The notes under the pieces were generated by a model that made no database searches, was not told the DNA's origin, and was given only the letters and a program-made list of their open reading frames with translations. 64,000 bases of DNA from IMG/VR virus record IMGVR_UViG_3300048924_000191, positions 124,001-188,000 of that record, one strand, 5' to 3'. How positions within the stretch are numbered: the stretch's first letter is position 1; each line of letters starts with the position of its first letter. Shown one piece after another: positions 1-62,505 of this stretch. The position numbers were made by a program, and so were the translations under genes.

Positions 1-1317
1 CGCAATCTGTCCTGGACATTCGAACGTATTGCAGCAACGTAGAGTCGGTCCTCGGCTGCTGTCGTAAAGAAGGAAGCTATTGCATGCCGGACAGTGTTCA
101 GGAATCTCTACCGGACTAGCGTCCACGGCGCGGGGTTCATCTACACGTTTGCTGAACACGAAGTCGACACTACCGTGATGACGACGAACCAAGATCTTGT
201 CGCCAATCCAGATCTTGGTTGCCTGTAGAAGACCCACACCACCCAACACCAGATCGTCTCTCTCCTTACCCATTACGGTAATCGGTTCGACCTCGACCCG
301 TGTATTGATAGCTCCATCGATGGCAACTTCGAACTTGATGTCGGTGACTGTCGTGCAGTTCCTGTTCCCGTATCTCCAGACAACACCCCATCCTGCACCG
401 AACCGAAAGTTTCTGCCGATCGGTCCCGGCTGATGAGATTGTCGATCCAACATGTCGTCGAGTTTAAGAAGAACGCCATCAACGGTGTACGGCTCCGTAT
501 CGATAACCTTCTCAAACTTTTCGATCTTCGCTGCGACCTCGACGTAGTCAACGGAAGGTGTGGGTTTGTTTACGCCGATGTGGAGGTAGTGGGCTCGACG
601 CAAGCGGTCAGTTGCCGTGAGATCGTTGGCAAACAGATTGGACTGTGGGCGATCGATCATCGGGACATCTTCAAGAATGAAGTCCAGCCGGTCTTCGCAA
701 CCCTCTAACGTCCGATCGAAGATCGCTGACGACATGGAGAACGGGTTCTTAAATACCCGGACCATGGTACCGTTAGTTAACTGCTCGTTGACTGCACGGA
801 ACTCCGAGATCGGCATGGTCACCGTGCCGTGGAACGTCCTGATGGCATCAAAGACCGGAATCTTCAACGGCACACCACGCACCTGACTGACGATATCGTA
901 AACATCGCTACCGGTCATGCCGTTACCACGAGCACCCACCCAAACCAGATTGCCGTGGGCGTAGACCAGCTCTACTTCATGACCTACGTAACGAGGTTCA
1001 ACCCGGTACGTACTTCGACCCGTATGCGTCAGGTAACGGTCCAACTCCTCCACTTCGTCTGCTTGCCGGAAATCCCAGATGCGCGCGACGTGAGGTAGAG
1101 TTGGTTGATTGGTGTAAAGATTGGTGAGTGGTCGATCCTCACCCATCGCATCGGCTATAGTCCACTCAGGATGGCGGTTCTCGAGCGCTTGGAGACAGTT
1201 CAGTAACTGTTCGTAAACACCCTCGGAGATTGTATTCAATCCGACCTCTCGCAACTTACGGTGGTCGATCACCGTGCTAGCAAGTAGGTTGTAGGTTTTC
1301 AGCAATGAGTTTTCCAT
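1..1317 (-). CDS. NAD+-dependent DNA ligase (LigA) homolog with degenerate catalytic motifs; 3' end runs off the window
   Basis: Absent from the ORF track (no stop in window). Manual translation from ATG 1317 found no stop: MENSLLKTYN..ISEGVYEQLL..ENRHPE..VEPRYVG..VYAHGNL..ARGNGMTGSDV..GVPLKI..FKNP..PYTVDGVLLKLDD..IGDKILVRR..PEHCPAC..RCCNTFEC. This is collinear with LigA domain Ia, adenylation domain, OB fold and Zn finger. Confidence 0.88.
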   Translation of the reverse strand, partial: MENSLLKTYNLLASTVIDHRKLREVGLNTISEGVYEQLLNCLQALENRHPEWTIADAMGEDRPLTNLYTNQPTLPHVARIWDFRQADEVEELDRYLTHTGRSTYRVEPRYVGHEVELVYAHGNLVWVGARGNGMTGSDVYDIVSQVRGVPLKIPVFDAIRTFHGTVTMPISEFRAVNEQLTNGTMVRVFKNPFSMSSAIFDRTLEGCEDRLDFILEDVPMIDRPQSNLFANDLTATDRLRRAHYLHIGVNKPTPSVDYVEVAAKIEKFEKVIDTEPYTVDGVLLKLDDMLDRQSHQPGPIGRNFRFGAGWGVVWRYGNRNCTTVTDIKFEVAIDGAINTRVEVEPITVMGKERDDLVLGGVGLLQATKIWIGDKILVRRHHGSVDFVFSKRVDEPRAVDASPVEIPEHCPACNSFLLYDSSRGPTLRCCNTFECPGQIA

Positions 1318-1912
1318 CACGAAGGCACTTCTCTCGGTGTTGTGCGTGGACGACGTTGCAGAAGAACTCCAGTCGCGCTTCCAGATCAGGTTCAATTAGG
1401 TTGAATACCGGGATATCCCTTTCGAGGGCTATCTTGACAGCCGTAGCTGTTCCACCAGTCACCTGCGGGCCGTTGCTTTTATACGGAGCCCAAGTCAGAA
1501 CGAAATCAACGGGGGAGTTCAGATCATCGCCAAGCACCTGATACGGGTTTCTGGAGTGGTGTGCGACACTACCACGTCCAGCGTTATGCCATCCACCTCT
1601 GGCTTTCTCACCGAGGGCGGCAGCTTCTTTGTAATTCTCAAAATGGTCCTGAGGGCAGTAGAAGCCATTCTCAGGATCGTGACGCAGTCCAGACATTCCT
1701 TCCCAGGAAATGTAGATACGGTTCTTGGACTTGTCGGAGTTCTTGTGAGAGTACGCTCCACGCAGCCCTGCGTAGTCCATTCCTTTCGGACAGCCGCCAC
1801 TGTACATCGAGTAGCCGAGCTCTGCCAGAATGTTCGTGAACCTGAACGTGAGTTTGAGGATATGTTGCGGAGTCTCTCTCGATCCAATGCAAGCGTATCG
1901 TTTGGTGATCAT
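1277..1912 (-). CDS. SLOG-superfamily (DprA/Smf-like) nucleotide-binding protein
   Basis: Motifs YACIGSRETP, YSGGCPKGMD, GGTATAVKIA..IPVFNL; GGAGG-type SD before ATG 1912. Confidence 0.75.
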   Translation of the reverse strand: MITKRYACIGSRETPQHILKLTFRFTNILAELGYSMYSGGCPKGMDYAGLRGAYSHKNSDKSKNRIYISWEGMSGLRHDPENGFYCPQDHFENYKEAAALGEKARGGWHNAGRGSVAHHSRNPYQVLGDDLNSPVDFVLTWAPYKSNGPQVTGGTATAVKIALERDIPVFNLIEPDLEARLEFFCNVVHAQHREKCLRDGKLIAENLQPTC

Positions 1913-2026
1913 CCCTTCCTCCAACGTGATTCTATGTGACCTAAATGCGGTGGTCAGACGCTATATGACTAATACATTAGGTAAAGATTCACCGCGAACT
2001 TTCCCATTCTCCAAGGACGTGTGTTC

Positions 2027-3286
2027 ATGAGCATCACGGGCGATCTGTCTCGGCGTTCCATCCAGCAATCTCAACAACTGTACCGCGACAATGCTGTCGC
2101 ACTAGGCAATGATGCTCTTACCGCCGAGATGGCGTCTTTCGAACACCTCCTTGATCGTCACCGCCGTGTGACTGAAGCGATGCGTTCGGTCGAAGACCTG
2201 ACTCGGATGTTCTTCAGTCAGCACCGTCTCGGTGTACCGATCGAACAAGCCAAGATGTACGAGTTCTCGGTCGAGTCGATTATCCGCGCCACTGGCGAGG
2301 AATTCCCACACGACATGCACGAACTCTCTTTCGAGTCGTCTTACGACTACTCGACTGAAGCTGAGTCGAAGGTCGGCAGTTCCCTGAAGAAGGTCGGCGC
2401 TTGGTTGATGGAAATCCTCACCAAGATCGCAGAAGGTCTCAAGGGTATCCTCACCAAGTTCACCACTTCCGTTCAAGGCAACAAACGCAAGCTGGAAGAA
2501 CGTCTTGCTCAGATGCGTGCCAAGGGCAGTAAGAAAGAAGGTGGCGAGAAGGACGACAAGGAACCCAAGCCAAGTACCGAGGCTAAGGGCCGTGCAATCG
2601 AAGTGCCAGACATCAAGATCCTAGGCGGCACTGGCGTACGTGTCGAAAACACCATCGACAAAGCCAACGCCAACACTCGTAAGGGTGGTCAGGATCTGCT
2701 GGGTATTGTGCGGGCATGTGGTGAAGCAGCCAAACGCTTCAATCCTTCGCAACACACCAGCAAGGACGGCCTGGATGACTTCATGAAAGACATCATGTTG
2801 TCGGTAGGGATGAAGACCGATGGCGGTAATGGTCATCGTGAGTTCCTCATCGTAAACGGTACTGGCGTCGAGATCACCTTCAACCGTAAGTCTGACGCAA
2901 CAGTCTCTGCCAAAGCTGGCAAGATCGCTTACGAGAAGAAGTCTGGTGAGATGCCTGGTCTGGATGAGGGCGAAGCCATGAAGTTGCTCGAGCACCTGAT
3001 TGAGTCGTACAACCAGATCGATAGTCTGCGTAAACCGCTCGACACCGTCTCCACCGTCTTTGGTCAATTGGCCAAGTCGATGAACGACGCGTACCGAGCT
3101 ACGCTGAACTCTCTGGCAGGCGCCGATAAGGACGCTGCCGATAAAGCTACTCAATCGAGCCGCGTGTACTCCACTCTGGGCCACGTCATGGCGACTCTGG
3201 GTCAGCTGCCGTCTAACCTGCTGAGTGGCTACCTCCAGGTTCACTACGCCGCCGACAACTACGCCGACAAAGCGTCTCGCGGTTAA
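2027..3286 (+). CDS. Internal head (inner body/ejection) protein, phiKZ internal-protein paralog family
   Basis: LSFESSYDYSTEAE prohead-protease motif followed by amphipathic helix (LKKVGAWLMEILTKI); similar layout to 3311, 4730 and 15974. Confidence 0.7.
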   Translation: MSITGDLSRRSIQQSQQLYRDNAVALGNDALTAEMASFEHLLDRHRRVTEAMRSVEDLTRMFFSQHRLGVPIEQAKMYEFSVESIIRATGEEFPHDMHELSFESSYDYSTEAESKVGSSLKKVGAWLMEILTKIAEGLKGILTKFTTSVQGNKRKLEERLAQMRAKGSKKEGGEKDDKEPKPSTEAKGRAIEVPDIKILGGTGVRVENTIDKANANTRKGGQDLLGIVRACGEAAKRFNPSQHTSKDGLDDFMKDIMLSVGMKTDGGNGHREFLIVNGTGVEITFNRKSDATVSAKAGKIAYEKKSGEMPGLDEGEAMKLLEHLIESYNQIDSLRKPLDTVSTVFGQLAKSMNDAYRATLNSLAGADKDAADKATQSSRVYSTLGHVMATLGQLPSNLLSGYLQVHYAADNYADKASRG

Positions 3287-3310
3287 TCACTCCTCATCAA
3301 GGAACAACAC

Positions 3311-4714
3311 ATGAGCACCATTTCTGAAGCACTGGCCAAACGCAACATGGCTGGCGGTACTGGTATCCGCGATACCCTCAGTCTGGAATCGGCCGCAGTG
3401 GACGCACGCGACGAAGTCGTAGGTCACATCGAAGGCCTGCATGAAATCGCCGCACAGATCGCCAAAGAAGGCGAGGATATCACCACCGGCACGTTGCTGG
3501 CGGACAACATCGACACGCTGGTCGATAACACCATCCAGGCTTACAAAGAAGGCGGTGTGGACGAGCGTGGTGCTGACCTGCTGGAAGTATCGATCGAATG
3601 TCTGATCCGTGCAACCAACCTGCCTCTGCATTATCGCGCCGTTGTACCTTCGTTCGAATCTGTTGCGCGACGTGAAGACTACTCGACCGAAGCCGAGAAG
3701 AAGAAAGACGGTTTCCTCTCCCGTCTGTTCACCATGCTGCGTGAAGCGCTGGCACGTCTCGGTTCTATTGTTCGTAGCTTCGTCGCTCGCATGCGCAAAA
3801 CCAGCGGTTCGCTGGAAAGCTACATCAAGTCGGTGAAGGCGCGTGCTGATCGTCTGCAAGGTGCCAGCAAAGGCGGTAAGGTCAAGATCGCCCAACAGGT
3901 GGCGTGGAACATGATCGACTTCGGTGGACATCTGCTGAAACCTGCCGACGCTATCGATCGCAACACCACTGCCTACGCTCGCTTCGTTGCCCAAGTGCAG
4001 AACGATCTCGGCAAGGTGACTCAGGTCGGTAAGCTGTCCACCACTCCTACCGACGCTGATGTCGATAAGTGGGTTAAGGAGCAGGCCGAAGGTCTGGGCG
4101 GTCACTACACCACCGGCCTGCCGCATTTGGTAAACGTGGCCTTCCTGCCGACCTGGAAGTTCAACATCAAGCACACTGCTGGTGTCGGTCGCGAGCACGG
4201 TGCCAACATCAAGAACAACCCGCTGATCGGCGCCAAGGCCGAAGTGTTCATGGAACACCAGGGCACTACCCCTACCGAGGCCGATGCACTGTCGGTGGCG
4301 GAAATCCATGCAACTGTCGACAAGGCTCTGCATGCGCTGTCGAACATCCAGCAAGTCGAGAAGAAAATAGACGCCTGGGTCACCAACAGCGATACCGCTG
4401 TACGCATCCTGACCAACATCTCCAAGTTCTTGGAGAGCAAAGAAATCAAGATGCCTGGCCACGACGATACCGTCCGCGCCATCAAGTCGCTCATGGCGGC
4501 GAACAACCTCTACTCCCAGGCATACACCCTGACGCTGCCGCACGCGATCACCATGATCCGTACCAACGTCTCGTTCGCCGACCGCTGCATCAGTCTGATC
4601 TCTCACGGCGAGCTCAAAGAAGTGAATGCCAACCAACACAAACTCCTGGGTCACTCCCCAGCGGCCAAGGCCGAGCCTGAGCACGAGTACGCCCACTTCG
4701 AGCCGGTTCACTGA
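3311..4714 (+). CDS. Internal head protein paralog
   Basis: PSFESVARREDYSTEAE then GFLSRLFTMLREAL; SD AAGGAA; strong codon bias. Confidence 0.75.
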   Translation: MSTISEALAKRNMAGGTGIRDTLSLESAAVDARDEVVGHIEGLHEIAAQIAKEGEDITTGTLLADNIDTLVDNTIQAYKEGGVDERGADLLEVSIECLIRATNLPLHYRAVVPSFESVARREDYSTEAEKKKDGFLSRLFTMLREALARLGSIVRSFVARMRKTSGSLESYIKSVKARADRLQGASKGGKVKIAQQVAWNMIDFGGHLLKPADAIDRNTTAYARFVAQVQNDLGKVTQVGKLSTTPTDADVDKWVKEQAEGLGGHYTTGLPHLVNVAFLPTWKFNIKHTAGVGREHGANIKNNPLIGAKAEVFMEHQGTTPTEADALSVAEIHATVDKALHALSNIQQVEKKIDAWVTNSDTAVRILTNISKFLESKEIKMPGHDDTVRAIKSLMAANNLYSQAYTLTLPHAITMIRTNVSFADRCISLISHGELKEVNANQHKLLGHSPAAKAEPEHEYAHFEPVH

Positions 4715-4729
4715 TAGGAAGGTTCTCCA

Positions 4730-6004
4730 ATGAACGTACATGAAGATGCATTGCAAGAAGCCATCGCCGCTGCTGCGCTGGCCGACACTCCCACCGAAGC
4801 GGTGGATGCCGAGCTGACCGCCAGTACCGATGACCTCAACGCAGCGTCCGAAGAATTGGGCGCCATGTCCCGTCAGGTGGAAAACGTTGGTGGTCTGCAC
4901 GAATCGATGGAGTCGTTTGTATTCGGCTTCATGGACCGTGTACCTGAAGGTGAGTGGGACGGTCGTGTCTCTCGTCAGTACCGCGTCGGTATCAACGCCC
5001 TGATGAATGCACATGGCTACACGACCAAACCCGACGCCATCTCCGCGTCGTTCGAATCGGCTGGCGTCAGTCAGACCAACGATGAGAACCGCAAAGAGAA
5101 CAAGGACAAAGCCACCGGTCTGCTGGGTCGTCTCTGGGACGCTTTGAAAGCTGCGCTGGCTTCGCTGGGCAAGATCATCGTTAGCTTCGGGTCGAAGATC
5201 ATCAATAACGGGTTCGTGGTGAGTAAGGCGGCTAAAAGCCTGCGTAACTCCCTCACCGTTCTGAAGGACGAAGTTCCTTCTGGTGACTTCGAAGGTAAAC
5301 CGGCCTGGGGTGTCTACTACCAGACCAAAGACGGTGCCGCTTCCAGTGCCTCCAGCATCGTTCACGAAACGCCGCTGGAAGTCAATACCCTGCTGGGTGG
5401 TTGGGACGCTTCGTTCAAGTCGCAGATCCGTCTGCTGGCTTTCCCTGGTCACACCGACGCTTCGGCTACTGTGGGTGGGGTGAAGAAGTTCAAGATCTCC
5501 GGCGGTATTGCGCTCGAGGTCGAATACGTCGACGAGCACCTGAAGGGCACTGGTAACAAACTGGCCGAAGCAACCATCAAGGTCAGCAAGGCTGAGTTCC
5601 CAACCGGCAAGATCCCTTACCTGAGTAAGGCCGAGATGCACAAGGTCGCGGATGCAATGGACAGCGCTGCGACCAGCATGAAGAACATGGCCGAACAAGG
5701 TAAGCCGATCGAACAGGAAATCGAGAAGCTGCTAGGCGAACTGAAGAAGCGTACCGGCGACTTCAAGGTCACTGCCAAGGCTGGTGTCGAGAAAGGTTCC
5801 GACGTCCCTGCTCTGGCGAAGAGCGGTAAAGACCAGGTGGCGATCGTGCGCAAGATGATCAGCCGCTACCCAATGGCCATGCAGGTGCTGGCACCTCAAG
5901 TGGCTCTGGTGGCAATGAATGCATGGCGTCACTGCCAAGCGTCCATCGGTAAGGCTCGCAAAGGTAAGAGCGACGACAAGGAAGGAATGCCTGTCGGCGC
6001 GTAA
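4730..6004 (+). CDS. Internal head protein paralog
   Basis: Acidic propeptide, ASFES site, GLLGRLWDALKAAL helix. Confidence 0.72.
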   Translation: MNVHEDALQEAIAAAALADTPTEAVDAELTASTDDLNAASEELGAMSRQVENVGGLHESMESFVFGFMDRVPEGEWDGRVSRQYRVGINALMNAHGYTTKPDAISASFESAGVSQTNDENRKENKDKATGLLGRLWDALKAALASLGKIIVSFGSKIINNGFVVSKAAKSLRNSLTVLKDEVPSGDFEGKPAWGVYYQTKDGAASSASSIVHETPLEVNTLLGGWDASFKSQIRLLAFPGHTDASATVGGVKKFKISGGIALEVEYVDEHLKGTGNKLAEATIKVSKAEFPTGKIPYLSKAEMHKVADAMDSAATSMKNMAEQGKPIEQEIEKLLGELKKRTGDFKVTAKAGVEKGSDVPALAKSGKDQVAIVRKMISRYPMAMQVLAPQVALVAMNAWRHCQASIGKARKGKSDDKEGMPVGA

Positions 6005-13093: not shown

Positions 13094-14386
13094 TCAGTCC
13101 TGGAAGACGGACTCTTCTACCAGCGTGAGGACGGCGTCCAAACGAGCGAGCAGGTCGGCTTGCAGACGACTCAGACGATCGCAGATGCGACCGATCTCAC
13201 TCACCAGTTGGGACTCCAGACGCAGCAGGTCAGCGGTGTTGATATCGCTGTCCAGTTCGTAGTCGTATTCGACCTCGACGTCGTCAGTCGACATGTTGGT
13301 CAACTTCTTGATGGTCACACCGACGCTGGCGTAAGACACCTTGACGGCGTCCGACACTTTCTCCAGCAAACGGATCTGTTCGCCAATCACCCGATCCAAC
13401 TCCTGACAGTATTGCAGGATGGTTTCGGTAGACAGGGATTTGATCTGATCGGTGTACTTGACCACGTCGGTAGCCAACGTGCCATCTTGTTGCAGGTGGA
13501 ACGCCATCAGGCGACCCATACGCTCTTCGTTGCGGGCGTACTTGACGTTACCCAGCAGCGGGAGTGGTTGGGCCTTGATAGCCGCATCCAGGCGCTGGAA
13601 CAGATCGTCCTGCTGGATACCTGCGAACAGGTCATGCGGAAGATCTTGCGCGCTGATAGCCTGCACCAAATGCGTCTTGACCGTGTGGTCACAACGACGG
13701 TGGTATTCCATCACGATGTCGGTCAGGGTACGACTGGTTGTGGCGAACGCAGTCAGGTCGTGAGTCGGTGCCTGAGAGTAGTTACTCCCATTGACCAGTA
13801 ACTCAAGAACCTTTTGCGGGAGACGGATGTCTACACCACCACTGCCTTTGCGAGACCGCACCTTGTCGCGAACACGACGGGTACGATTCTGAAGACCGAC
13901 GGTGCTTTGGTTCAGACGAACGAACGACAGTGCCAAACGACCACCGGTGCGAGCAGCGGCGGCGGAGAACGCTTTCACAGCAGAACCGAACCAATCGGAC
14001 AGCGACTCCAGCGACACTTCATCAACACCGCCGTCACTCCCCATGGCAAGCTTGGGGATGGTGGTCTCCAAGACTTGTTCTGCGGTGGCGATGTTCATGT
14101 TAGCCGTAGCGACGAAAGCATCAGCAGCAGCGGCTGGCATGTCTTCAGCGGCTTTGGCAGCGGCACCGATAGCGGTAACCACAGCAGCACCGGCTTCCAT
14201 GTCCTTGGCCGAATTGTTCGTCTGGACTTCGTGCAGAGCTTCAGCCATCTCACTGCGTTCTTCGCGCGCTTCTTGCACGTCTTCGACAGTGAGTTCGTGG
14301 GAGGGTGGTGGGATCACCACTTCGGAGGCTTCGAGCGAGAGTTTACCGCGCAACGCCTCTTGCAGAGTAGTTTTGAATACAGACAT
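13094..14386 (-). CDS. Internal head protein (phiKZ gp92-97 cluster-like)
   Basis: LSLEA and VSLES sites; Ala/Glu-rich propeptide. Confidence 0.6.
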   Translation of the reverse strand: MSVFKTTLQEALRGKLSLEASEVVIPPPSHELTVEDVQEAREERSEMAEALHEVQTNNSAKDMEAGAAVVTAIGAAAKAAEDMPAAAADAFVATANMNIATAEQVLETTIPKLAMGSDGGVDEVSLESLSDWFGSAVKAFSAAAARTGGRLALSFVRLNQSTVGLQNRTRRVRDKVRSRKGSGGVDIRLPQKVLELLVNGSNYSQAPTHDLTAFATTSRTLTDIVMEYHRRCDHTVKTHLVQAISAQDLPHDLFAGIQQDDLFQRLDAAIKAQPLPLLGNVKYARNEERMGRLMAFHLQQDGTLATDVVKYTDQIKSLSTETILQYCQELDRVIGEQIRLLEKVSDAVKVSYASVGVTIKKLTNMSTDDVEVEYDYELDSDINTADLLRLESQLVSEIGRICDRLSRLQADLLARLDAVLTLVEESVFQD

Positions 14387-14389
14387 GGA

Positions 14390-15556
14390 TCACCTGTAGG
14401 TTTTAATGGAGGCGTAGCAGTATTGAATCGCAGCGCGGCAGACCGACATCGAGTGGATCAGCAGCGAACGGGTGGGTTGTTGCAACCAGTGCGTGAGGGT
14501 GTTCACCGTCTTGCGCACTGCGTCCATGTCAGACGGAGCGAAGGAGCTCGTCTTCAGGAACGTATCCAACGAGGTACGCGAACGGTTAGCCGCTGCACGT
14601 ACACCGGAGTTACTGGACTTGGAGATGTCGTCCAACAGACTGCGGATCACTTTCGGCAGTTCGCCGATCTGACCAGGCTGAAGAGTAGTCAACGTATATT
14701 CACGTTGAACCTTCAGTTCGTTCCGACCAGTCTTCTCGAAGAGGAATCCGTGGAAGCGGAACGCGTCGATACCACGCTCACGCAGATCACCGCGTAGGTA
14801 GAACAAACTCATCCCACCCAGCAGGGAAGGAGTAGCCTGAACATTGTTGCGCTTGAAGCGATCGTACGGCGCTGCGTGCATACCGCACTGAGATGCCATC
14901 TTGTCGAACGGGATCTTGGTGATCACAGCTACCATGGCATCAGTCAGTACCTTACCGGTCTTACCACGAGCTGCGGCTTGCAGTTCAGCAGACGCGTCGA
15001 TGACTTCCTTACGGTAGTCCATCGCCATGACCTTGACCACATTGTGCAGCTGATGGATTTGAGACTCGAGCTTACCAGCGTCGTCGATCTGGATACCGTG
15101 CACACGCATGTACCGACCGATACGACCCAACTCAACGGTAGGTTCGCTAGGACGCATGCCTTTGGTGGTAGCCACCTGACGTTCCAGGAAACTCAGTTTA
15201 CGCGAGAGCCACGTAGCGGCAAGGTCGATGTTCGAGAAGAAGTCGAGCAATGCCTTGAAGAACTGTTGGAGCGCACTGATGGCAGCACGGACTACCGACG
15301 CCGCTACCGTCTTGACCGACTCCACGCTGATCTCATCCAAGGACCAGCAGTGACCGATCTCACCCGTGACTGCCGTCATCAAAGGACGGGCAGATGCTTC
15401 GAACGAAGCCTTGGGCATTTCACCGGCTTGACTGAGCAAGTCTTCAAACGCGGTGTGGGAATTCATGAATCGAGAGAAAGCTTCGAACGCGATCGTAACT
15501 TCGTGATCCGCTCTTACCAGCTCCTCGAAAGGATCTTCTTCCAGCAGCAAGTCCAT
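14390..15556 (-). CDS. Internal head protein (phiKZ gp92-97 cluster-like)
   Basis: AFE, SFE and SVE sites, then helix ALQQFFKALLDFF; LLGG motif. Confidence 0.65.
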   Translation of the reverse strand: MDLLLEEDPFEELVRADHEVTIAFEAFSRFMNSHTAFEDLLSQAGEMPKASFEASARPLMTAVTGEIGHCWSLDEISVESVKTVAASVVRAAISALQQFFKALLDFFSNIDLAATWLSRKLSFLERQVATTKGMRPSEPTVELGRIGRYMRVHGIQIDDAGKLESQIHQLHNVVKVMAMDYRKEVIDASAELQAAARGKTGKVLTDAMVAVITKIPFDKMASQCGMHAAPYDRFKRNNVQATPSLLGGMSLFYLRGDLRERGIDAFRFHGFLFEKTGRNELKVQREYTLTTLQPGQIGELPKVIRSLLDDISKSSNSGVRAAANRSRTSLDTFLKTSSFAPSDMDAVRKTVNTLTHWLQQPTRSLLIHSMSVCRAAIQYCYASIKTYR

Positions 15557-15644: not shown

Positions 15645-15977
15645 CTATTTCTTCTTCAGATAATCGTGGACCTCAACCAGATGGTTGAACCGTTTCTCCG
15701 AGAAGTTAGTCTTCAGGTAGACTTCCTGAAGGTGGAAGTAGTCCTCATTCCATTTCGACTTATCCGTTTCCAATTCGCGGGCGAAGGATTTCTCTTCGTA
15801 CGGTTGCCACAGGTCTTTGACCTGTTTGGCCGCGGCGCGAGCCGTCGCTTTGATATCGGCACCGGAAAGCTTGGAATTATTGAACTCCAACCGCAAGGCA
15901 GTTCTGACGAGGAGGGCGTCCGACTTCCCCGACTTATATTCACGAATGAATTTGTCGACGTTGTCGGACCCAGTCAG
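15645..15977 (-). CDS. 110-aa C-terminal extension, predicted to be reached by -1 frameshift from the upstream head protein
   Basis: Frame is -1 relative to 15974..17278, open across its stop, has no ATG, and is entered at G_GGA_AAC. Confidence 0.7.
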   Translation of the reverse strand: MTGSDNVDKFIREYKSGKSDALLVRTALRLEFNNSKLSGADIKATARAAAKQVKDLWQPYEEKSFARELETDKSKWNEDYFHLQEVYLKTNFSEKRFNHLVEVHDYLKKK

Positions 15978-17278
15978 TTTCCCGCAGCACCTTTGTCGTC
16001 GGCGGCAGCCGGTTCTTCCTTCGCCTTGGCACCGTGGGCACCCAGGGAGGCTTTACCGAAGTTGTAGGCATCTTTACCCAGCTGCGACAGGTAGTTGACG
16101 TAGGTCGGAACCACGCCTTCGCCGGCCTTGATGATGCGGGCAGCGGTGGTAACGACTTTCGCCACGCCTTGACGCTTGGCTTTGGCATCGTCGCCTTCGG
16201 TCTTGTTGGCGGCCGCTTGGGCAGCTTTCATGACCTTCTCGGCGTCGTCCAGGTACTTCTCGGCTTTCGCCTCGGCCAGCTTCATGCGGCGACCCAGGGT
16301 CACCAGCTTACCGCCCAGAGCGGAAACTTCCGAAGGAGACAGCGGAGCGGTCTTCTCGGCGCCTGGAGAAGGCTTGGTGACGTTGAAGGTGATCTTGTCG
16401 CCGTTCAGCTTCAGCTCGGCCTTCACGCCGCCTGGCAGTTCGATGGAAGTATCGCGCAGACCCATGGAGGCGAACTTGGCTTGCCAGTTGGCATCGGTCA
16501 GGTCGTTGGCACCGACGTCGCCTTTCAGCGCGGCAACAACAGGCTGCAGGACCTTCTTCATCGGCTCGACCACCTTGGAGGTGAACTCGCCGTCGAAGAC
16601 CTGGAGGGCCTTGTCGATCGCTTGGCCAGGATTACCGCCCAGACGACCGTAACCGGTGGTCTTCAGTTCGGTTTTCTTGGCTTCGCCTTTGGTCTTGGAA
16701 GCCAGACGCTGCAGTTGCTGACCGCCGGTCACGATGGCGTCGGCGGAACGACCCATGGTGCCGAAGAACTGCTTGATGCTGGTGCGAGCGGAGTTGAAAG
16801 CCTGGACCAGAACTTTCCACAGACGGGACAGAACGCCCTCGGTCTTCTCTTCAGCTTCGGTGGTGTAGTCTTCCACCTGAGCCGATTCGAAGCTGTGTTG
16901 CATGGCCATGACTTCATCACGGACCAGGGACGACGGCAGCTCGCGAGCTTCTACCGACAGGGCAACGTTCTGGATGTACCAGCGCATACCGCTGTTGTCC
17001 AGAGGTTGACCGCCAGCGGCCATAGCGCGCAGTTGAGCCAGGTTGCTTTCCAGCGAGTCGACGGCTTCGGCGACTTTCTCGGCAGCAACGTCCGAGGCTT
17101 GCATCTTCTCGACCTTCTCGGCGGTGTCGGCGATGGCCTCTTCCAGCTCGGTGGCGGTCTCGTCGGTGACGACGGTGATTTCCTCGGCACCGAGGTAGCT
17201 GTGATCTTCATCGGACTCAGGCGCTACCGCACCCGATTCGACCGACAGCTGGTTCAACATTTTAGCGAGTTCGCTCAT
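15974..17278 (-). CDS. Abundant internal head protein, phiKZ gp93-family
   Basis: HSFESAQVEDYTTEAE, GVLSRLWKVL, LPGG; AGGAG SD; very strong codon bias. Confidence 0.75.
   Translation of the reverse strand: MSELAKMLNQLSVESGAVAPESDEDHSYLGAEEITVVTDETATELEEAIADTAEKVEKMQASDVAAEKVAEAVDSLESNLAQLRAMAAGGQPLDNSGMRWYIQNVALSVEARELPSSLVRDEVMAMQHSFESAQVEDYTTEAEEKTEGVLSRLWKVLVQAFNSARTSIKQFFGTMGRSADAIVTGGQQLQRLASKTKGEAKKTELKTTGYGRLGGNPGQAIDKALQVFDGEFTSKVVEPMKKVLQPVVAALKGDVGANDLTDANWQAKFASMGLRDTSIELPGGVKAELKLNGDKITFNVTKPSPGAEKTAPLSPSEVSALGGKLVTLGRRMKLAEAKAEKYLDDAEKVMKAAQAAANKTEGDDAKAKRQGVAKVVTTAARIIKAGEGVVPTYVNYLSQLGKDAYNFGKASLGAHGAKAKEEPAAADDKGAAGN
15977..15983 (-). other. -1 ribosomal frameshift slippery heptamer G_GGA_AAC
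   Basis: GCG GGA AAC TGA: correctly phased X_XXY_YYZ directly before the stop. Confidence 0.72.
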
Positions 17279-17338
17279 CTTGGTATTGCTCCTAGGCAAA
17301 TTGAACGTCGGTATGCAAGCCGACGGCGTATACGCACA

Positions 17339-55914: not shown

Positions 55915-57966
55915 TTAACGACGATCCCAGTCATCGCTGAAGAAGCGACCACCACGACCTTCGCGATCACGATCGCGGTCACGACCACGACGACGGCTCA
56001 CGCCGCCTTCGGAGATTGCCTGCGACGAGAACAGACGGTTACCCACCGAACGACGACCCGACAGGGTGTCGCCACCGGCGATGTACGGGCTCATGCGGGA
56101 CTTGTCCAGGGCGGACGCGAGAGCCGGCAGCAGGTTCTTCTGGAAGACCAGCTGTTCGGCAGTCTGTACGACATGGATGTCCGGCACGAACTTGCGCAGG
56201 ATGTGGTAACGCTCGGACAGGTTGTAGTCGACGGTGTGGCGGCTGTCTTCGAAGGTGAACTGGTAGTCGCGAACGAGCTCCAGATCTTTCGAACCAGCAC
56301 GGGTCAGCACAGCCGGTACGTTCCACTCGCTCAGCGGACGCAGAGTCGAGGTGTCCGGGTCGGTCCAGGTACCGATCAGAACGCGAGTACCCGCGGATTC
56401 AACAGGCAGAGGCATGCTGCCGCCGTTCATTTCGCGGTATTCTTCGCGGAAGCGGTCGTCGGTCAAAACGTCCCAGGCATCGTACAGCTTGGTGCACAGG
56501 GCGTCGACTTTCGACTTGCTTTCCTCGGTGGCGATCTTCTCGAAGATCGACAGGATTGCGGCGTTCTGGCCGGAACTGGCGGTGACCATACCGAACGACA
56601 CGTCGCGCTTGAAGAACGCGTCGATGAAGTCGGCGAAGTCGTCGTCGTTCATGTTGCTGGTGACCAGGTCCATTGCGTCGCGACGCTGATCATCTTCCAG
56701 ATCCGCCAGCAGGGCGATATCCTTCAGATCGAACACCGGCTTGACTTTGCCACCGACGGTCTTGCGAGGACGCGCCATGTTGGTCCAGCGGTAGTCGTTC
56801 GACAGCAGAGCCACGGAGCCCAGCGCCAGACCTACCAGACCCAGGCTGTTCGGGTAACCGTCGACCGGGGCGATGGAGTTGATGTTGATAACGCCCTGCA
56901 TGAAGGCGGTTTCGTCATCTTCGTCGCGGCGGCGGGTACGCTTACGGCTCAGGCGGTTGCGGTCACGATCGTTGTCGTCGTCCTGGATGAACATATCCAG
57001 AGAGCAACGGGCTTCGACCATCGGAGTACGCTCGTACAGATCGTCCTCGTCATCGTCGGTCCGTTCCGAGTAGTGCGAAGTTACCAACGCATCGGTACGG
57101 ATCGGCAGGCCGGAGGTGTCGTGGCCGAACGGCTGGTTGTAATCGATGGTGGCTTCCAGACGGTCGCCGCTGTCGATCAGTTCCGGACGCAGAGCGAACT
57201 CGCTGATTGCGTCTGGATTGCTGGCGTCCAGGATTTCCTGACGGTAACCGCACAGGGCATCGATGGCATTGTCGAAGATCTGAGCAACCACGCGGTTGTT
57301 TTCTTTCTCGGAGACTTCCGAGATCAGATCCGCCAGGATCACCTGCGAGTTGACCAGCACGACACGTTTGCAACCCAGGCCGGCCGCTTCTTCACGAATG
57401 CCTTTGGTGTAGGCGTCGTTCATGCGGTCTTCCGGCAGCACCAGCGCCTCGTAGTTGTCGCCACGAGATACCGCGTTGCGGGTGGTCTGGGAACCCGGCT
57501 GCTCGATGCAGAGGGTGTAGACCAGAGTTACGCCGCCCGGGATCAGTTTCGGCAGAGGCAGGCAGACCAGCAGGGACGGCAGAGCACGCGAGCCTTTACG
57601 GCCGGTATACGGCAGAACCTGGAAGCGCGACTGCTGGATGTCCGGGTGGATGTTTGGATTGTCGAAGGTCTTGGCAGCCTTGAAGGTATCCATCAGGATA
57701 GCCAGGGCAGCGTCAGAAACACCCGACATTTGCGGGCGGTTCATGGCACGACCGAGGGACGCCATGTTGAAGCCACGGCCTTCGTCTTCTTCTTCACCAC
57801 GACGCCCGCGCTTACCGCCACGGTCGCTGCGGTCACGGTCGCGGCCACCACGATCTTCATCACGGTCGCGGTCACGGTTTTCGGTGCGGTTCTCGCGGCC
57901 TTGATCGCCGGTCGACTTGTCGCCGCCGGTTGGTTCGTCGTCGAGTACCAGATCGTCATTGCTCAT
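55915..57966 (-). CDS. chmA: Chimallin (ChmA/PhuN), phage nuclear shell protein (phiKZ gp54-like)
   Basis: 683 aa, directly upstream of nvRNAP beta' N; strongly biased codons; AGGAG SD; SGLPIRTD, LKDIALL, LIGTWTD..LRPL motifs. Confidence 0.85.
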   Translation of the reverse strand: MSNDDLVLDDEPTGGDKSTGDQGRENRTENRDRDRDEDRGGRDRDRSDRGGKRGRRGEEEDEGRGFNMASLGRAMNRPQMSGVSDAALAILMDTFKAAKTFDNPNIHPDIQQSRFQVLPYTGRKGSRALPSLLVCLPLPKLIPGGVTLVYTLCIEQPGSQTTRNAVSRGDNYEALVLPEDRMNDAYTKGIREEAAGLGCKRVVLVNSQVILADLISEVSEKENNRVVAQIFDNAIDALCGYRQEILDASNPDAISEFALRPELIDSGDRLEATIDYNQPFGHDTSGLPIRTDALVTSHYSERTDDDEDDLYERTPMVEARCSLDMFIQDDDNDRDRNRLSRKRTRRRDEDDETAFMQGVININSIAPVDGYPNSLGLVGLALGSVALLSNDYRWTNMARPRKTVGGKVKPVFDLKDIALLADLEDDQRRDAMDLVTSNMNDDDFADFIDAFFKRDVSFGMVTASSGQNAAILSIFEKIATEESKSKVDALCTKLYDAWDVLTDDRFREEYREMNGGSMPLPVESAGTRVLIGTWTDPDTSTLRPLSEWNVPAVLTRAGSKDLELVRDYQFTFEDSRHTVDYNLSERYHILRKFVPDIHVVQTAEQLVFQKNLLPALASALDKSRMSPYIAGGDTLSGRRSVGNRLFSSQAISEGGVSRRRGRDRDRDREGRGGRFFSDDWDRR

Positions 57967-59958: not shown

Positions 59959-60113
59959 TGTCGATTCTCCTTATTCTGACAATGGGCGCAGAAGCCGCAA
60001 TACTCACACCAAGGCACAGGTGGTGGCGCTGTCGGAACCGTTGTCGGCAGTGGTTTGCGGACTATCTCTGGACCAGCCGTGATGCGGTAGAGCAGATACA
60101 TTAACCATTTCAT
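59955..60113 (-). CDS. 52-aa Cys-rich microprotein (CxxCxxCxxC)
   Basis: MKWLMYLLYRITAGPEIVRKPLPTTVPTAPPPVPWCEYCGFCAHCQNKENRQ; ATGA overlaps at both ends; below ORF-track cutoff. Confidence 0.65.
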   Translation of the reverse strand: MKWLMYLLYRITAGPEIVRKPLPTTVPTAPPPVPWCEYCGFCAHCQNKENRQ

Positions 60114-62236
60114 ATTTTCATCCCAAGGAAGTCGAACACCAAACGGTAGTTGTTTCGGTCAACAATGTGCAGACCGGTGGATTCCAGCGTGCGGTAGAAA
60201 CCTTCGTTGATCTGGTAGGTCAGCTTACGCACGTTGGCCGCAGACTGGATCTCTACAGGCAACCCACACTGCTTGATCGACATGGTCGGCAGATACACTG
60301 TCGGCAGTTCTGTACGGCCGTGCTTCGCCATCCACGCAATCATACGTTCAGCCAACGCTCGGTCTTCGATCTCAGCCAGCCATTCCTGCGTTTTGGTTTT
60401 GTTCACCAACTCGGTAGTGACTTTAACCACAGGGATAGGCGGTTGAATCGATTCACCGTACTTTGGACCAAACACTTCTTGCCACATCTCGAAGTAAGGG
60501 ACCTTGTTGGTCTCAGGTTTGATCGACGCAGACTTCAGGTAGGTGTACTCACCGCGCATGATCGAACGGATAGTGTCCAGTTCGAACTTAGCCACTTCTT
60601 CCAGCAGCTCTTTGGCCGAGATCTGTTCACTGTTGTTGGCAGCGTCCAGGATCTTACGGCGCATGCGGTCACCGCCTTGCAGCGTTTGTTTCTGGGTGGA
60701 CGAACCACGCAGCCCCACGCCTTTGGTTTCAGTCTCGTCTTCTTCGTAGATGTTACCTTCCCGCATCGACATCAAGGCGTAATAGTGCTTCGCCAAGTTA
60801 GTCCGAGCAAAGACTGGGAAGCCGTACTCGTTCTTCATCGCCAGACGGAAGGTGTTGGCAACTTCCACACCAACGTTGGCAGACAACATAGCCAGCGAGT
60901 GCGCAATGCACTGACACGCCATGTACGTCGCCAGATACCAGATCCGGTCGTTAACCTCACCACGAATCATGTTACCCGAGTACCACTGCACCCAGTATTC
61001 GGTAGTGAAGATCGAGGAGTCAGTATCCGCTGCCAGACAGGCACGACGCTGGATAGACTTCAGACTCGCCACAGTGGGAGGCAGGTGATCAGGTACGAAC
61101 AGACCAGAGATAAAGTCGGACCACTTCGCAGAGGACTGCATGAACTTCTGAGCAGTCTTACCGATGGTCTTCCAACCTTCCGGATTGTTCTCTTTCACCA
61201 GCTCGTGAGTTGTACCCTTGAGCACAGAGGCACACAAGGCGTTCACGTAAGCGATGTCAGTAGCATCCAGAGACTTCAGTGCTACGTCGGTATCGATATC
61301 GTCGGGAATGTCCGAAAGATCCAACGCGATCAGCTCGGACATCATTTGTCGAATGATGTCCGGGTTGTGCTTGGCTACGTGGAACATGTCGCCAGAATAC
61401 ACGACAGCTGCGCGCTCCAGCGGAGTCATGCCCTCAGCCAGCTGCAAGAACTTCTCCAGCTCGTGCGGGATACGCCAGTACAGTCTACCAGAGTACTCGA
61501 CCATGTCGACCACATCTTGAGCGGTCGGATAAACCAGATCGTACTTGGTGATGGTCTCCTGCATCCGATCGAGGTTTTCGATCGTTAAGATAGCCATTAA
61601 GTTTGCCCTGGCTATCTCTGGCGTATGGTAGTGCTTCGATCCCATGAGGAACCGTTCTACCGTGGCGTTACCGTAACCTGCGGCAGCACGGCAAAGCGAA
61701 GTCAGACTGGAGTGACCTGTCGCCAGATACAGCGCGTTACCTTCAAAGCCCCGCTGTCCAGATACCGAGTTGATTCGGATCTTACGGGCATTCTGGTCGT
61801 AGTCCGCCAATGCAGACTTGAGCATCTCGCCCAACTGCTTGAACTGGAACATCGCCTTCTTGGACGTCTTACGGGCTTTGATGTTGTCGTCCTGCCATTC
61901 CGCAGTAACTGACTTCTCAACTTCCGGACGTTCATACACCACCATCGACGGCGAAACAATACGACCGCTGTCAGTGATCTCCTGCACGTAGTTCAGGAAA
62001 CTGGTGGTATCTTCTACCCGATGTCCTTTGGCTTTGCTGATCAGCTGGGTCATGGCCGGATCTTTGATCGCGAGCTCTTTCCCTTCCTTGATCTTTTCTT
62101 GAACGAACTTCAGACTCCCCGTGTAACCACGACGGAGCATCAGCGAAATGTACTTGGCGTTCTGCCTGACGTAACCACGGCGAATGTCCAGGTTACGACG
62201 GTACTGCTCTACTGGGCGAACAAACGGGTTAGCCAT
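60110..62236 (-). CDS. Split family-B DNA polymerase, catalytic subunit (phiKZ gp50-like)
   Basis: Motif B QNARKIRINSVSG, SSLTSLCR, motif C ADTDS, KNEY, AKHY, TKGV. Confidence 0.9.
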   Translation of the reverse strand: MANPFVRPVEQYRRNLDIRRGYVRQNAKYISLMLRRGYTGSLKFVQEKIKEGKELAIKDPAMTQLISKAKGHRVEDTTSFLNYVQEITDSGRIVSPSMVVYERPEVEKSVTAEWQDDNIKARKTSKKAMFQFKQLGEMLKSALADYDQNARKIRINSVSGQRGFEGNALYLATGHSSLTSLCRAAAGYGNATVERFLMGSKHYHTPEIARANLMAILTIENLDRMQETITKYDLVYPTAQDVVDMVEYSGRLYWRIPHELEKFLQLAEGMTPLERAAVVYSGDMFHVAKHNPDIIRQMMSELIALDLSDIPDDIDTDVALKSLDATDIAYVNALCASVLKGTTHELVKENNPEGWKTIGKTAQKFMQSSAKWSDFISGLFVPDHLPPTVASLKSIQRRACLAADTDSSIFTTEYWVQWYSGNMIRGEVNDRIWYLATYMACQCIAHSLAMLSANVGVEVANTFRLAMKNEYGFPVFARTNLAKHYYALMSMREGNIYEEDETETKGVGLRGSSTQKQTLQGGDRMRRKILDAANNSEQISAKELLEEVAKFELDTIRSIMRGEYTYLKSASIKPETNKVPYFEMWQEVFGPKYGESIQPPIPVVKVTTELVNKTKTQEWLAEIEDRALAERMIAWMAKHGRTELPTVYLPTMSIKQCGLPVEIQSAANVRKLTYQINEGFYRTLESTGLHIVDRNNYRLVFDFLGMKI

Positions 62237-62238
62237 CG

Positions 62239-62505
62239 TTACAGAATCTCTCGTTGTTGACACACTGGGGGTTGGTCTGGCGTATCGCCGAAGTGGCCGG
62301 CAGCGCCTTGGGACGACTCAAACCTCGACCCGCAGTGGAAACATACCCACGCCTTATCGTGCATGGTGTACGACACGGAATCATCTTCCGTACCACGGAC
62401 CAGATCGACTCGCATGCCGAATTTGGTCCTGAACTCCGTCATTGCTTTGTAGAGTTCTTCTTCGTCGACAATGGGATCGACGACGGTGAGTGTGAGTCGG
62501 CTCAT
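62239..62505 (-). CDS. Small protein with Zn-finger-like motif
   Basis: WVCFHCGSRF..AAGHFG..PVC; GGAGG SD. Confidence 0.65.
   Translation of the reverse strand: MSRLTLTVVDPIVDEEELYKAMTEFRTKFGMRVDLVRGTEDDSVSYTMHDKAWVCFHCGSRFESSQGAAGHFGDTPDQPPVCQQREIL

What the first reader, a model, noticed from the sequence alone, without database searches (positions are those of the whole stretch)
1..1317. Apparently catalytically dead NAD+-dependent DNA ligase (KxDG replaced by RYVG), missed by the ORF track
Seen: an open frame of 439 codons that follows the LigA architecture. The adenylated Lys position (codon 991-993, residue 109) is Arg in EPRYVG. Other motifs are also changed: RGDG to RGNG, ANPRN to KNPFS, motif V AFKF to VWRY, RRAGDVIP to RRHHGSVD. 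Motif IV (DGVLLK), the OB fold and the Zn-finger cysteines are kept. Established: the motif I Lys is essential for ligase adenylation. Inference: an intact frame with selective loss of catalytic residues suggests a repurposed pseudo-ligase rather than decay. Possible roles are a nick/DNA-binding clamp, a dominant-negative or decoy for host LigA-directed functions, or an NAD/AMP-binding protein.
Basis: partly seen in the sequence, partly recalled or inferred. Interest (0 to 1): 0.8.

Follow-up and report, generated by a model that had tools for sequence, protein, structure and literature searches.

The report
Dead DNA ligase kept by phage
A giant, nucleus-forming phage from plant-root soils carries a full-length copy of the bacterial-type NAD+ DNA ligase that has lost the residues needed to join DNA, yet natural selection still preserves the protein, so it must now do a different, non-enzymatic job.

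Summary
Window 1317..1 (minus strand) holds the first 439 of 601 codons of a LigA homologue (P0001). Arg (CGT, 991-993) sits where all 122 intact homologues compared have the adenylated Lys. Also changed are D117V, E173T, R200F, R277I, K314R, Y225E and Y22R (E. coli numbering). D285, G286, K290, R136 and the four Zn cysteines are kept.

It is not decaying. A strain variant differs by 22 synonymous and 3 non-synonymous changes (dN/dS 0.04, p = 1e-11). A third variant has no indels. AlphaFold gives a confident LigA fold (pLDDT 90).

The gene is the positional orthologue of a BRCT-less LigA in related chimallin/PhuZ-encoding jumbo phages. It always overlaps an upstream DprA-like gene. In its subclade a DarG/AdfM-like macrodomain gene follows. 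Seven clade members keep every catalytic residue. P0001 and a second group (P0043, P0044, P0194) have lost them, probably independently, and that group is also constrained (dN/dS about 0.16).

NAD/AMP binding looks unlikely. The actual role and the source of nick sealing remain untested. No second ligase was found in about 100 of 243 kb.

The parts
1..1317 (-). First 439 of 601 codons of the LigA-like pseudo-ligase gene. The rest lies left of the window. The full gene is L003 10001-11806.
1129..1317 (-). Domain Ia (residues 1-63). NMN-contact positions are changed: Y22R (1249-1251), D32E, D36E. Y35 is kept.
364..1128 (-). Nucleotidyltransferase (adenylation) domain, residues 64-318.
   Evidence: Pfam PF01653, residues 75-289; AF2 model
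991..993 (-). Codon CGT = Arg109 at the motif I position of the adenylated Lys (E. coli K115).
   Evidence: K in 122 of 122 intact homologues
985..987 (-). Val111 at the motif I Asp position (E. coli D117).
823..825 (-). Thr165 at the motif III Glu position (E. coli E173).
739..741 (-). Phe193 at the invariant Arg of NPRN (E. coli R200).
670..672 (-). Glu216 at the aromatic position (E. coli Y225) that, from memory, stacks on the adenine. It is Y/F/H/W in intact homologues.
502..504 (-). Ile272 at the Arg conserved in intact homologues (E. coli R277).
463..480 (-). Motif IV DGVLLK (D280, G281, K285), retained.
373..375 (-). Codon AGA = Arg315 at the motif V Lys position (E. coli K314).
118..363 (-). 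OB-fold domain (residues 319-400). R379 is kept. The GRTG and VIP motifs are changed, as in the whole clade.
   Evidence: Pfam PF03120 E 2.7e-5, below cut-off
10..117 (-). Cys4 zinc finger (residues 401-436), with all four cysteines kept (C409, C412, C428, C434).
1277..1912 (-). Upstream DprA-like gene (211 aa). Its last 41 nt (1277-1317) overlap the ligase-like start. This overlap recurs in all six phages examined.
   Evidence: PHROG 768 E 5.6e-48

Best explanation
The gene is this phage's orthologue of a BRCT-less NAD+-ligase (LigA) found in a small clade of chimallin/PhuZ-encoding, phiKZ-like jumbo phages.

Shown. In this lineage the chemistry of nucleotidyl transfer has been dismantled. 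The Lys nucleophile is Arg, and D117, E173, R200, R277, K314, the adenine-stacking aromatic and the domain Ia NMN contacts are replaced. The whole Ia-NTase-OB-Zn-HhH fold and a clade-specific C-terminal helix are kept by strong purifying selection. On sequence evidence, then, it is a pseudoenzyme and not a decaying gene.

Inferred. It most likely works without catalysis as a DNA-binding or scaffolding component of the phage's intranuclear DNA replication, recombination and repair machinery. It probably acts together with the DprA-like protein, to which it appears translationally coupled, and next to the DarG/AdfM-like DNA de-ADP-ribosylase. Nick sealing would then be done by another ligase, either host LigA or a phage enzyme elsewhere in the genome.

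Confidence breakdown: about 0.85 that it is a non-catalytic protein maintained by selection, and about 0.35 for the specific scaffold/DNA-binding role.
For: Catalytic loss. R109, V111, T165, F193, I272 and R315 sit at positions where all 115 canonical LigAs and all 7 intact clade members have K, D, E, R and K, and at R277 R or rarely K. Only 18 of 32 near-invariant LigA columns are kept, against 31-32 in the intact clade members.

Selection.
- P0001 against strain variant P0203: 22 synonymous and 3 non-synonymous changes, dN/dS 0.04, binomial p = 1.2e-11. Neighbouring genes give 0-0.15.
- A third variant shows 64 substitutions in 2,901 nt with no indels.
- Neutral decay to the observed divergence at formerly invariant sites would predict about 15-17 stop codons (P of none about 1e-7).
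- The second active-site-less lineage (P0044 against P0194): dN/dS about 0.16. Domain Ia (dN 0.09) and Zn (0.21) are constrained and OB (0.67) is relaxed.

Fold. AF2 gives pLDDT 90 and pTM 0.85. The best structural matches are E. coli LigA 2owo and 4glx, TM 0.68-0.69.

Orthology and context.
- The order IP genes | DprA-like (overlapping the start) | LigA-like | macro | Arc | Tmk | ThyA recurs in five phages. The sixth (P0046) has the same order but lacks the macro gene.
- The clade has 100/100 support.
- The macro gene matches DarG at E 1e-30. Such chimallivirus macrodomains (AdfM) act inside the phage nucleus (PMC13309987).
- PhiPA3 LigA gp257 and RAY DprA are nuclear proteins (PMC10245766, PMC10299810).
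- A chimallin-like gene, PhuZ and a divergent PolB lie in or beside the window.
Against: - No biochemical data exist. Inactivity is inferred from sequence and from mutational knowledge of E. coli LigA recalled from memory.
- No expression data were obtained.
- The proposed DNA-binding role is weakened because several DNA-contact residues (R200, R277, OB R333/T334, HhH glycines) are lost. Some of these are lost in the whole clade.
- In the sister dead lineage the OB domain evolves almost neutrally.
- No partner interaction was tested.
- A replacement ligase was not found in the roughly 100 kb inspected. About 140 kb remain unseen.
Confidence: 0.6

Rival explanations
1. Decoy or dominant-negative. 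The dead ligase occupies nicks or host partners of LigA to block host DNA repair. Alternatively it mimics a ligase to divert a host immune sensor or inhibitor aimed at phage or host LigA.
For: The full LigA shape is preserved while chemistry is lost. Amino-acid evolution is fast compared with the neighbours: 36% identity against 57-69%, and the terminal branch is twice that of P0039. This fits an arms-race surface. The gene also lies next to a known type of counter-defence gene, the DarG/AdfM-like macro (PMC13309987).
Against: - The BRCT domain is absent. From memory, this domain mediates LigA partner contacts.
- Within-population dN/dS is very low (0.04), not diversifying.
- Intact orthologues occupy the same operon, which points to a shared housekeeping DNA-transaction role.
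- No host or defence target is identified.
Confidence: 0.12
2. Nucleotide or ADP-ribose reader. The crippled adenylation domain still binds NAD+, AMP, AppDNA or ADP-ribosylated DNA. It then acts as a sensor, sponge or lesion recogniser for the neighbouring DarG-like hydrolase.
For: K115R and K314R keep the positive charge. E113, R136, D285, G286 and K290 are retained. Mutated LigA adenylation domains can bind NAD+ reversibly, as shown by the PDB titles 5tt5 (K115M with NAD+) and 8jyd (LigA-based sensor). The adjacent gene handles ADP-ribosyl-DNA.
Against: - The adenine-stacking aromatic is Glu, the ribose contact E173 is Thr, and R200 and R277 are lost.
- Domain Ia residues Y22, D32 and D36 are changed.
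- In P0043, P0044 and P0194 the pocket is degraded further (K to T/I, D285 to R/G, R136 to Y/F), yet the protein is still conserved.
- The more distant subclade has the DprA-LigA pair but no macro gene.
Confidence: 0.12
3. It is still a working ligase with unconventional chemistry, for example another nucleophile, step-3-only sealing of pre-adenylated nicks, or a trans-acting partner that supplies the missing residues.
For: Motif IV, R136, the Zn finger and the overall clamp fold are intact. No other ligase was seen in the roughly 100 kb inspected.
Against: At least six residues invariant in 122 intact homologues are replaced at once, including both catalytic lysines and the motif I Asp. There is no Lys near motif I. 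Sister lineages lose even more residues. From memory of the ligase literature, K-to-R at motif I abolishes adenylation in this superfamily.
Confidence: 0.05
4. It is a recently inactivated gene drifting toward loss, with the frame open only by chance.
For: LigA does not appear among the chimallivirus core genes discussed in PMC10299810, so catalysis is evidently dispensable in some relatives. The gene is the most diverged in its locus.
Against: - dN/dS is 0.04 with p = 1e-11.
- There are no indels or stops in three strain variants or in four diverged active-site-less sequences.
- About 15-17 stops would be expected under neutrality.
- The fold is confident.
Confidence: 0.03

Closest known systems
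Bacterial NAD+-dependent DNA ligase LigA (E. coli LigA, PDB 2owo/4glx/5tt5)
   Same: Same domain order Ia-NTase-OB-Zn finger-HhH. Sequence E-value 1e-23 and structural TM 0.68-0.69. The Cys4 finger, motif IV and R136 are conserved.
   Different: No BRCT domain. The Lys nucleophile and D117, E173, R200, R277, K314, Y225 and Y22 are replaced. It scores 167 bits against the 444-bit equivalog cut-off of TIGR00575.
BRCT-less LigA of related jumbo phages (P0039, P0041, P0042, P0045-P0048; metagenomic, uncharacterised)
   Same: Positional orthologues: same length class (554-577 aa), same overlap with the DprA-like gene, same C-terminal ERGxxLLxRMGxLL helix, and one clade with 100/100 support.
   Different: They keep every catalytic residue and 31-32 of 32 near-invariant LigA columns. 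P0001 keeps 18.
P0043 / P0044 / P0194 ligase-like proteins (sister phages)
   Same: These are also active-site-less orthologues in the same operon and are also under purifying selection.
   Different: The replacements are more radical (K115 to T/I, K314 to P/Q/E, D285 to R/G) and there is no Pfam hit at all. They are probably an independent loss: P0001 shares 31 exclusive residues with intact P0039 against 11 with this group. A single loss is not rejected, however (AU p = 0.415).
LigA of cultured chimalliviruses (PhiPA3 gp257, Goslar gp121, Moabite gp088)
   Same: Jumbo-phage LigA. PhiPA3 gp257 localises inside the phage nucleus (PMC10245766).
   Different: These are 680-691 aa with BRCT and an intact KxDG, and they lie outside the BRCT-less clade. 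Identity to P0001 is only 22-24%.
T4 RNA ligase 1 (gp63), a ligase with a separate non-catalytic tail-fibre-attachment role (recalled from memory, not tested here)
   Same: A precedent for a phage nucleotidyltransferase-fold ligase having a second, non-catalytic function.
   Different: It belongs to a different family (ATP-dependent RNA ligase) and retains catalysis. There is no sequence relationship.

Membership tests
NAD+-dependent DNA ligase LigA (EC 6.5.1.2) | Domain architecture Ia - nucleotidyltransferase - OB - Cys4 Zn finger - HhH (- BRCT) | tested here: met
   Pfam, PHROG and NCBIfam matches cover residues 28-575. AF2 pLDDT 90. Foldseek top hits are LigA structures. BRCT is absent, as in the whole phage clade.
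NAD+-dependent DNA ligase LigA (EC 6.5.1.2) | Motif I KxDG with the Lys that forms the covalent enzyme-AMP intermediate | tested here: not met
   RYVG: R109 for K115 and V111 for D117. K and D are present in 122 of 122 intact homologues.
NAD+-dependent DNA ligase LigA (EC 6.5.1.2) | Motifs III, IIIa, IV and V catalytic and nucleotide-contact residues (E173, R200, Y225, R277, D285, K290, K314) | tested here: not met
   E173T, R200F, Y225E, R277I and K314R. Only D285, G286 and K290 are kept.
NAD+-dependent DNA ligase LigA (EC 6.5.1.2) | Domain Ia NMN-binding residues (Y22, H23, D32, Y35, D36) | tested here: not met
   Y22R, H23E, D32E and D36E. Y35 is kept.
NAD+-dependent DNA ligase LigA (EC 6.5.1.2) | Score above the curated equivalog threshold | tested here: not met
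   TIGR00575: 167 bits against a 444-bit cut-off. NF005932: 166 against 369. Intact P0039 reaches 349 and 342.
NAD+-dependent DNA ligase LigA (EC 6.5.1.2) | Self-adenylation with NAD+ and nick sealing | not testable with these tools
   Needs purified protein.
BRCT-less LigA clade of phiKZ-like jumbo phages (orthologous group) | Monophyly, conserved gene neighbourhood, and start overlapping the DprA-like gene | tested here: met
   Clade support is 100/100, and 100/99 for the inner 7-member group. Synteny holds in six phages.
Pseudoenzyme (non-catalytic homologue retained by selection) | Loss of catalytic residues together with purifying selection and a preserved fold | tested here: met
   (loss). 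(dN/dS 0.04, no indels). (fold).
Pseudoenzyme (non-catalytic homologue retained by selection) | The protein is expressed and has a demonstrable non-catalytic function | not tested
   No usable RNA run was found. The only RNA candidate held 5% of the sampled words.
Decaying pseudogene | Frameshifts or stops, or neutral substitution pattern (dN/dS near 1) | tested here: not met
   There are no stops or indels in P0001, P0203, the X7 variant, P0043, P0044 or P0194. dN/dS is 0.04 and 0.16.

The most novel reading that the evidence does not exclude
Nucleus-forming jumbo phages have, probably twice, turned their intranuclear NAD+ ligase into a non-catalytic reader of damaged DNA ends or adducts (nicks, AppDNA or ADP-ribosylated DNA). 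In this reading a ligase fold has been repurposed as a lesion sensor or scaffold in an anti-DarT and repair module, while sealing is outsourced.
Probability: 0.12. Interest if true: 0.85.

Novelty: new variant of a known kind. Interest (0 to 1): 0.62.

Why it matters
LigA is one of the best-studied essential bacterial enzymes and an antibiotic target. I found no report of a natural LigA homologue that has lost its nucleophile yet is kept by selection (literature searches; absence there is not proof).

Intact and dead orthologues sit in the same operon of closely related phages. That gives a natural experiment for separating the catalytic and non-catalytic roles of a DNA ligase.

For nucleus-forming phages it raises a concrete, testable question. 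Who seals Okazaki fragments inside a compartment that excludes most host proteins when the phage's own ligase is dead?

There is also a practical point. Automatic annotation would call this gene 'NAD-dependent DNA ligase', which is probably wrong for its function.

Tried and rejected
- **Megablast of window 1-6000 against INPHARED:** no match. tblastn found only LigAs at about 25% identity or less.
- **Word-index protein search:** the single-protein search found only the protein itself plus ordinary bacterial LigAs. The same search with the clade alignment did not recover the clade members either. Only the exhaustive HMMER search found the relatives.
- **Collection scans:** IMG/VR and JGI metagenome scans returned only copies of the same phage plus distant LigAs.
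- **dN/dS of P0001 against P0039:** unusable, because dS is saturated. YN00 often failed at these divergences.
- **Net charge per domain:** does not separate dead from intact proteins.
- **Second ligase:** Pfam hits were looked up or scanned for about 100 kb of the 243-kb genome (contig positions about 103.5-201.7 kb) and showed none. The rest of the genome is unexamined.
- **Assembly error at the Lys codon:** rejected. AAA/AAG to CGT needs at least two changes, and the codon is identical in independent assemblies.
- **Single versus double loss:** left open. The ML tree and the exclusive-residue counts favour two losses, but the AU test does not reject one.
- **Model coordinates:** not available to scripts, so the pocket could not be inspected in 3D.
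Full report
**1. The observation**

On the minus strand an open frame runs from the ATG at window 1317-1315 to base 1 (439 codons) and leaves the window. The mechanical ORF list omits ORFs that run off an end, which explains why the ORF track missed it.

An exact-sequence hit gives the complete product, P0001, 601 aa. It lies on contigs of up to 243.7 kb. The window is positions 124001-188000 of IMGVR_UViG_3300048924_000191.

Homology to NAD+-dependent ligase is unambiguous:
- Pfam adenylation domain E 7e-18, with OB and Zn-finger models weakly matched.
- E. coli LigA structures E about 1e-23 over residues 15-431.
- PHROG 3869 E 1e-39.
- TIGR00575 E 5e-49, but only 167 bits against a 444-bit equivalog cut-off.

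**2. The active site**

I aligned P0001 with 115 canonical LigAs, 7 intact members of its own clade and E. coli LigA for numbering.

Replaced positions:

| E. coli residue | P0001 | Note |
|---|---|---|
| K115 | R109 (CGT, window 991-993) | motif I Lys |
| D117 | V111 | motif I Asp |
| E173 | T165 | motif III |
| R200 | F193 | NPRN |
| Y225 | E216 | aromatic position |
| R277 | I272 | |
| K314 | R315 | motif V Lys |
| Y22, H23, D32, D36 | R, E, E, E | domain Ia |

K115, D117, E173, R200 and K314 are invariant in all 122 intact sequences.

Retained: E113, G118, R136, D285, G286, K290, R379 and all four zinc cysteines.

Of 32 columns that are at least 98% conserved in intact LigAs, intact clade members keep 31-32 and P0001 keeps 18.

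- N in RGNG occurs in 24 of 115 canonical LigAs and in the intact nearest relative.
- The RRHHGSVD and OB 'GRTG' differences are shared by the whole clade, including members with intact active sites.

The statement that the motif I Lys is the adenylation nucleophile, and that these residues are essential in E. coli LigA, rests on established enzymology recalled from memory. The PDB entry '5tt5, LigA (K115M) in complex with NAD+' is consistent with it.

**3. Relatives and orthology**

The word-index search found no close relative. The exhaustive HMMER search did. It found a group of 554-577-aa proteins without BRCT: P0039 (37% identical), P0041-P0048, and later P0194.

In a maximum-likelihood tree they form one clade (100/100), separate from the LigAs of cultured chimalliviruses and bacteria. 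P0039, P0041, P0042 and P0045-48 keep every catalytic residue. P0043, P0044 and P0194 have lost them more radically than P0001, and have no Pfam hit at all.

Gene order is conserved in five phages: phiKZ internal-head-protein paralogues, then a DprA-like gene whose end overlaps the ligase start, then the ligase-like gene, a macrodomain gene, small genes, Arc, thymidylate kinase and thymidylate synthase. The more distant P0046 phage has the same order but lacks the macro gene. P0001 is therefore the positional orthologue of an apparently functional ligase.

The ML tree places P0001 beside intact P0039, with weak support (78/47). P0001 shares 31 exclusive residues with P0039 and only 11 with the P0043 group. 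Long-branch attraction would push the other way. Two independent losses are therefore likelier, but the AU test does not reject a single loss (p = 0.415).

**4. Is it decaying?**

No. Four lines of evidence agree.

- **Strain variant.** P0203 comes from another sample and carries the same RYVG. It differs from P0001 by 22 synonymous and 3 non-synonymous codons: dN 0.0022, dS 0.055, dN/dS 0.04, binomial p = 1.2e-11. That is the same range as the ten flanking genes, 0-0.15.
- **Third variant.** Contigs from another run show 64 substitutions over 2,901 nt and no indels. The listed changes inside the gene that are not shared with P0203's amino-acid changes fall on third codon positions.
- **Stop-codon expectation.** If the 14 of 32 changed 'invariant' sites reflected neutral drift, about 15-17 stop codons would be expected in 601 codons. 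The probability of none is about 1e-7.
- **The other dead lineage.** P0044 and P0194 are 63% identical, with dN 0.30, dS about 1.9 and dN/dS about 0.16. That becomes about 0.4 if the locus-median dS is used. By domain, Ia (dN 0.09) and Zn (0.21) are most constrained. OB (0.67) is nearly unconstrained, which is the reverse of the intact pairs, where OB is the best-conserved domain.

The gene does evolve fast at the protein level. It is 36% identical between this phage and the P0039 phage, against 69% and 68% for its two flanking genes and a locus median of about 57%. Its terminal branch is twice as long as that of P0039.

**5. Structure**

With a 100-sequence alignment, AlphaFold2 gives mean pLDDT 90.0 and pTM 0.85. 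All five domains are confident, and residues 569-600 form a long C-terminal helix. Foldseek's best full-length experimental matches are E. coli LigA 4glx and 2owo (the nicked-DNA-adenylate complex), TM 0.68-0.69.

**6. Biological context**

The window and its flanks encode:
- six phiKZ_IP paralogues and a tail tube protein;
- a chimallin-like protein at 55915-57966 (-);
- a divergent family-B DNA polymerase at 60110-62263 (-);
- a PhuZ/TubZ-like tubulin just beyond the right end.

This is a deep-branching nucleus-forming jumbo phage. The closest isolates are only about 28-30% identical in a structural protein. It occurs in root and rhizosphere metagenomes sequenced from 2017 to 2025.

In cultured chimalliviruses the LigA homologue PhiPA3 gp257 and the DprA homologue of phage RAY localise inside the phage nucleus (PMC10245766, PMC10299810).

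The downstream macro gene matches the DarG DNA ADP-ribosyl glycohydrolase model at E 1e-30. It has homologues in many phiKZ-like phages. It resembles AdfM, the chimallivirus nuclear anti-DarT2 macrodomain described in PMC13309987.

The pseudo-ligase therefore sits in a compact, apparently translationally coupled module of intranuclear DNA-transaction proteins. LigA is not mentioned in the text of the core-genome paper. That fits catalysis being dispensable in some lineages.

**7. Most likely mechanism**

*Shown.* The residues needed for ligase adenylation and nick chemistry are lost, the fold is retained, selection is strongly purifying, and the gene is orthologous to intact ligases in a conserved operon.

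*Inferred.* The protein acts without catalysis, most plausibly as a DNA-binding or scaffolding partner in phage replication, recombination and repair. The parts likely involved are those that remain constrained in dead copies: domain Ia, the Zn finger, HhH and the clade-specific C-terminal ERGxxLLxRMGxLL helix. Nick sealing would come from host LigA or an unseen phage ligase.

*Rivals.* A decoy or dominant-negative role and a nucleotide or ADP-ribose-reader role are not excluded. Residual ligase activity and neutral decay are both unlikely.

**8. What remains open**

- No second ligase was found in about 100 kb of the 243-kb genome. The remaining 140 kb could not be reached within the look-up limits.
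- There is no expression evidence and no biochemistry.
- The number of independent losses is unsettled.

**9. Novelty**

Literature searches for inactive or pseudo-LigA proteins returned nothing relevant. I classify this as a new variant of a known kind: a LigA-derived pseudoenzyme, recurrent within one jumbo-phage clade.

Noticed in passing
window 55915-57966 (-); L044 4654-5661 (-), about 3.5-4.5 kb right of the window end; window 60110-62263 (-): A chimallin-like shell protein (Pfam 25.9 bits, just under the cut-off, and listed without a weak mark in the precomputed hits). Also a PhuZ/TubZ-like tubulin and a divergent family-B DNA polymerase (666 bits). Together they mark a deep-branching nucleus-forming jumbo phage whose closest isolates are only about 28-30% identical.
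   Followed up: partly
L003 11760-12215 (immediately left of the window; overlaps the ligase-like 3' end by 47 nt): A 151-aa macrodomain protein whose best NCBIfam hit is the DarG DNA ADP-ribosyl glycohydrolase (E 1e-30). It is probably a homologue of the chimallivirus anti-DarT2 factor AdfM (PMC13309987).
   Followed up: partly
window 2021-3286, 3311-4714, 4730-6004 (+) and 13094-14386, 14390-15556, 15974-17299 (-): Six paralogous phiKZ-type internal head (inner body) protein genes in two clusters. The 803-aa ORF at 3287-5698 (-) is a shadow ORF antisense to the first cluster.
   Followed up: partly
L003 10001-11806 compared with L047 599-2404: All 22 synonymous differences between the two strain variants lie in codons 311-510, and none lie in codons 58-310. 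This looks like the edge of a recombination tract inside the gene.
   Followed up: no
L003 15379-16416 and 18022-19632; L042 18079-20421 and 20685-21325: The thymidylate kinase here is 345 aa, against 224-231 aa in relatives (a C-terminal extension). In the relative L042 the thymidylate synthase carries an intein (Hint/LAGLIDADG hits) and is followed by a GIY-YIG/I-TevI-like homing endonuclease gene.
   Followed up: no
P0044 versus P0194 (L042 9649-11325, L041 10001-11719): In the more degraded dead-ligase lineage the OB domain evolves almost neutrally (39% identity, dN 0.67), while domain Ia is 83% identical. This is the reverse of the pattern in intact ligases.
   Followed up: partly
H63/H64, Serratia phage 2050HW 195161-196848: The LigA gene of this cultured jumbo phage matches in three pieces and is annotated as three CDSs. 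This suggests an interrupted (intron, intein or split) ligase.
   Followed up: no
window 1-1924 (sequencing-run search): The phage recurs in root, rhizosphere and plant metagenomes from several studies, 2017 to 2025. It is therefore a persistent plant-root-associated phage whose host is unknown.
   Followed up: no
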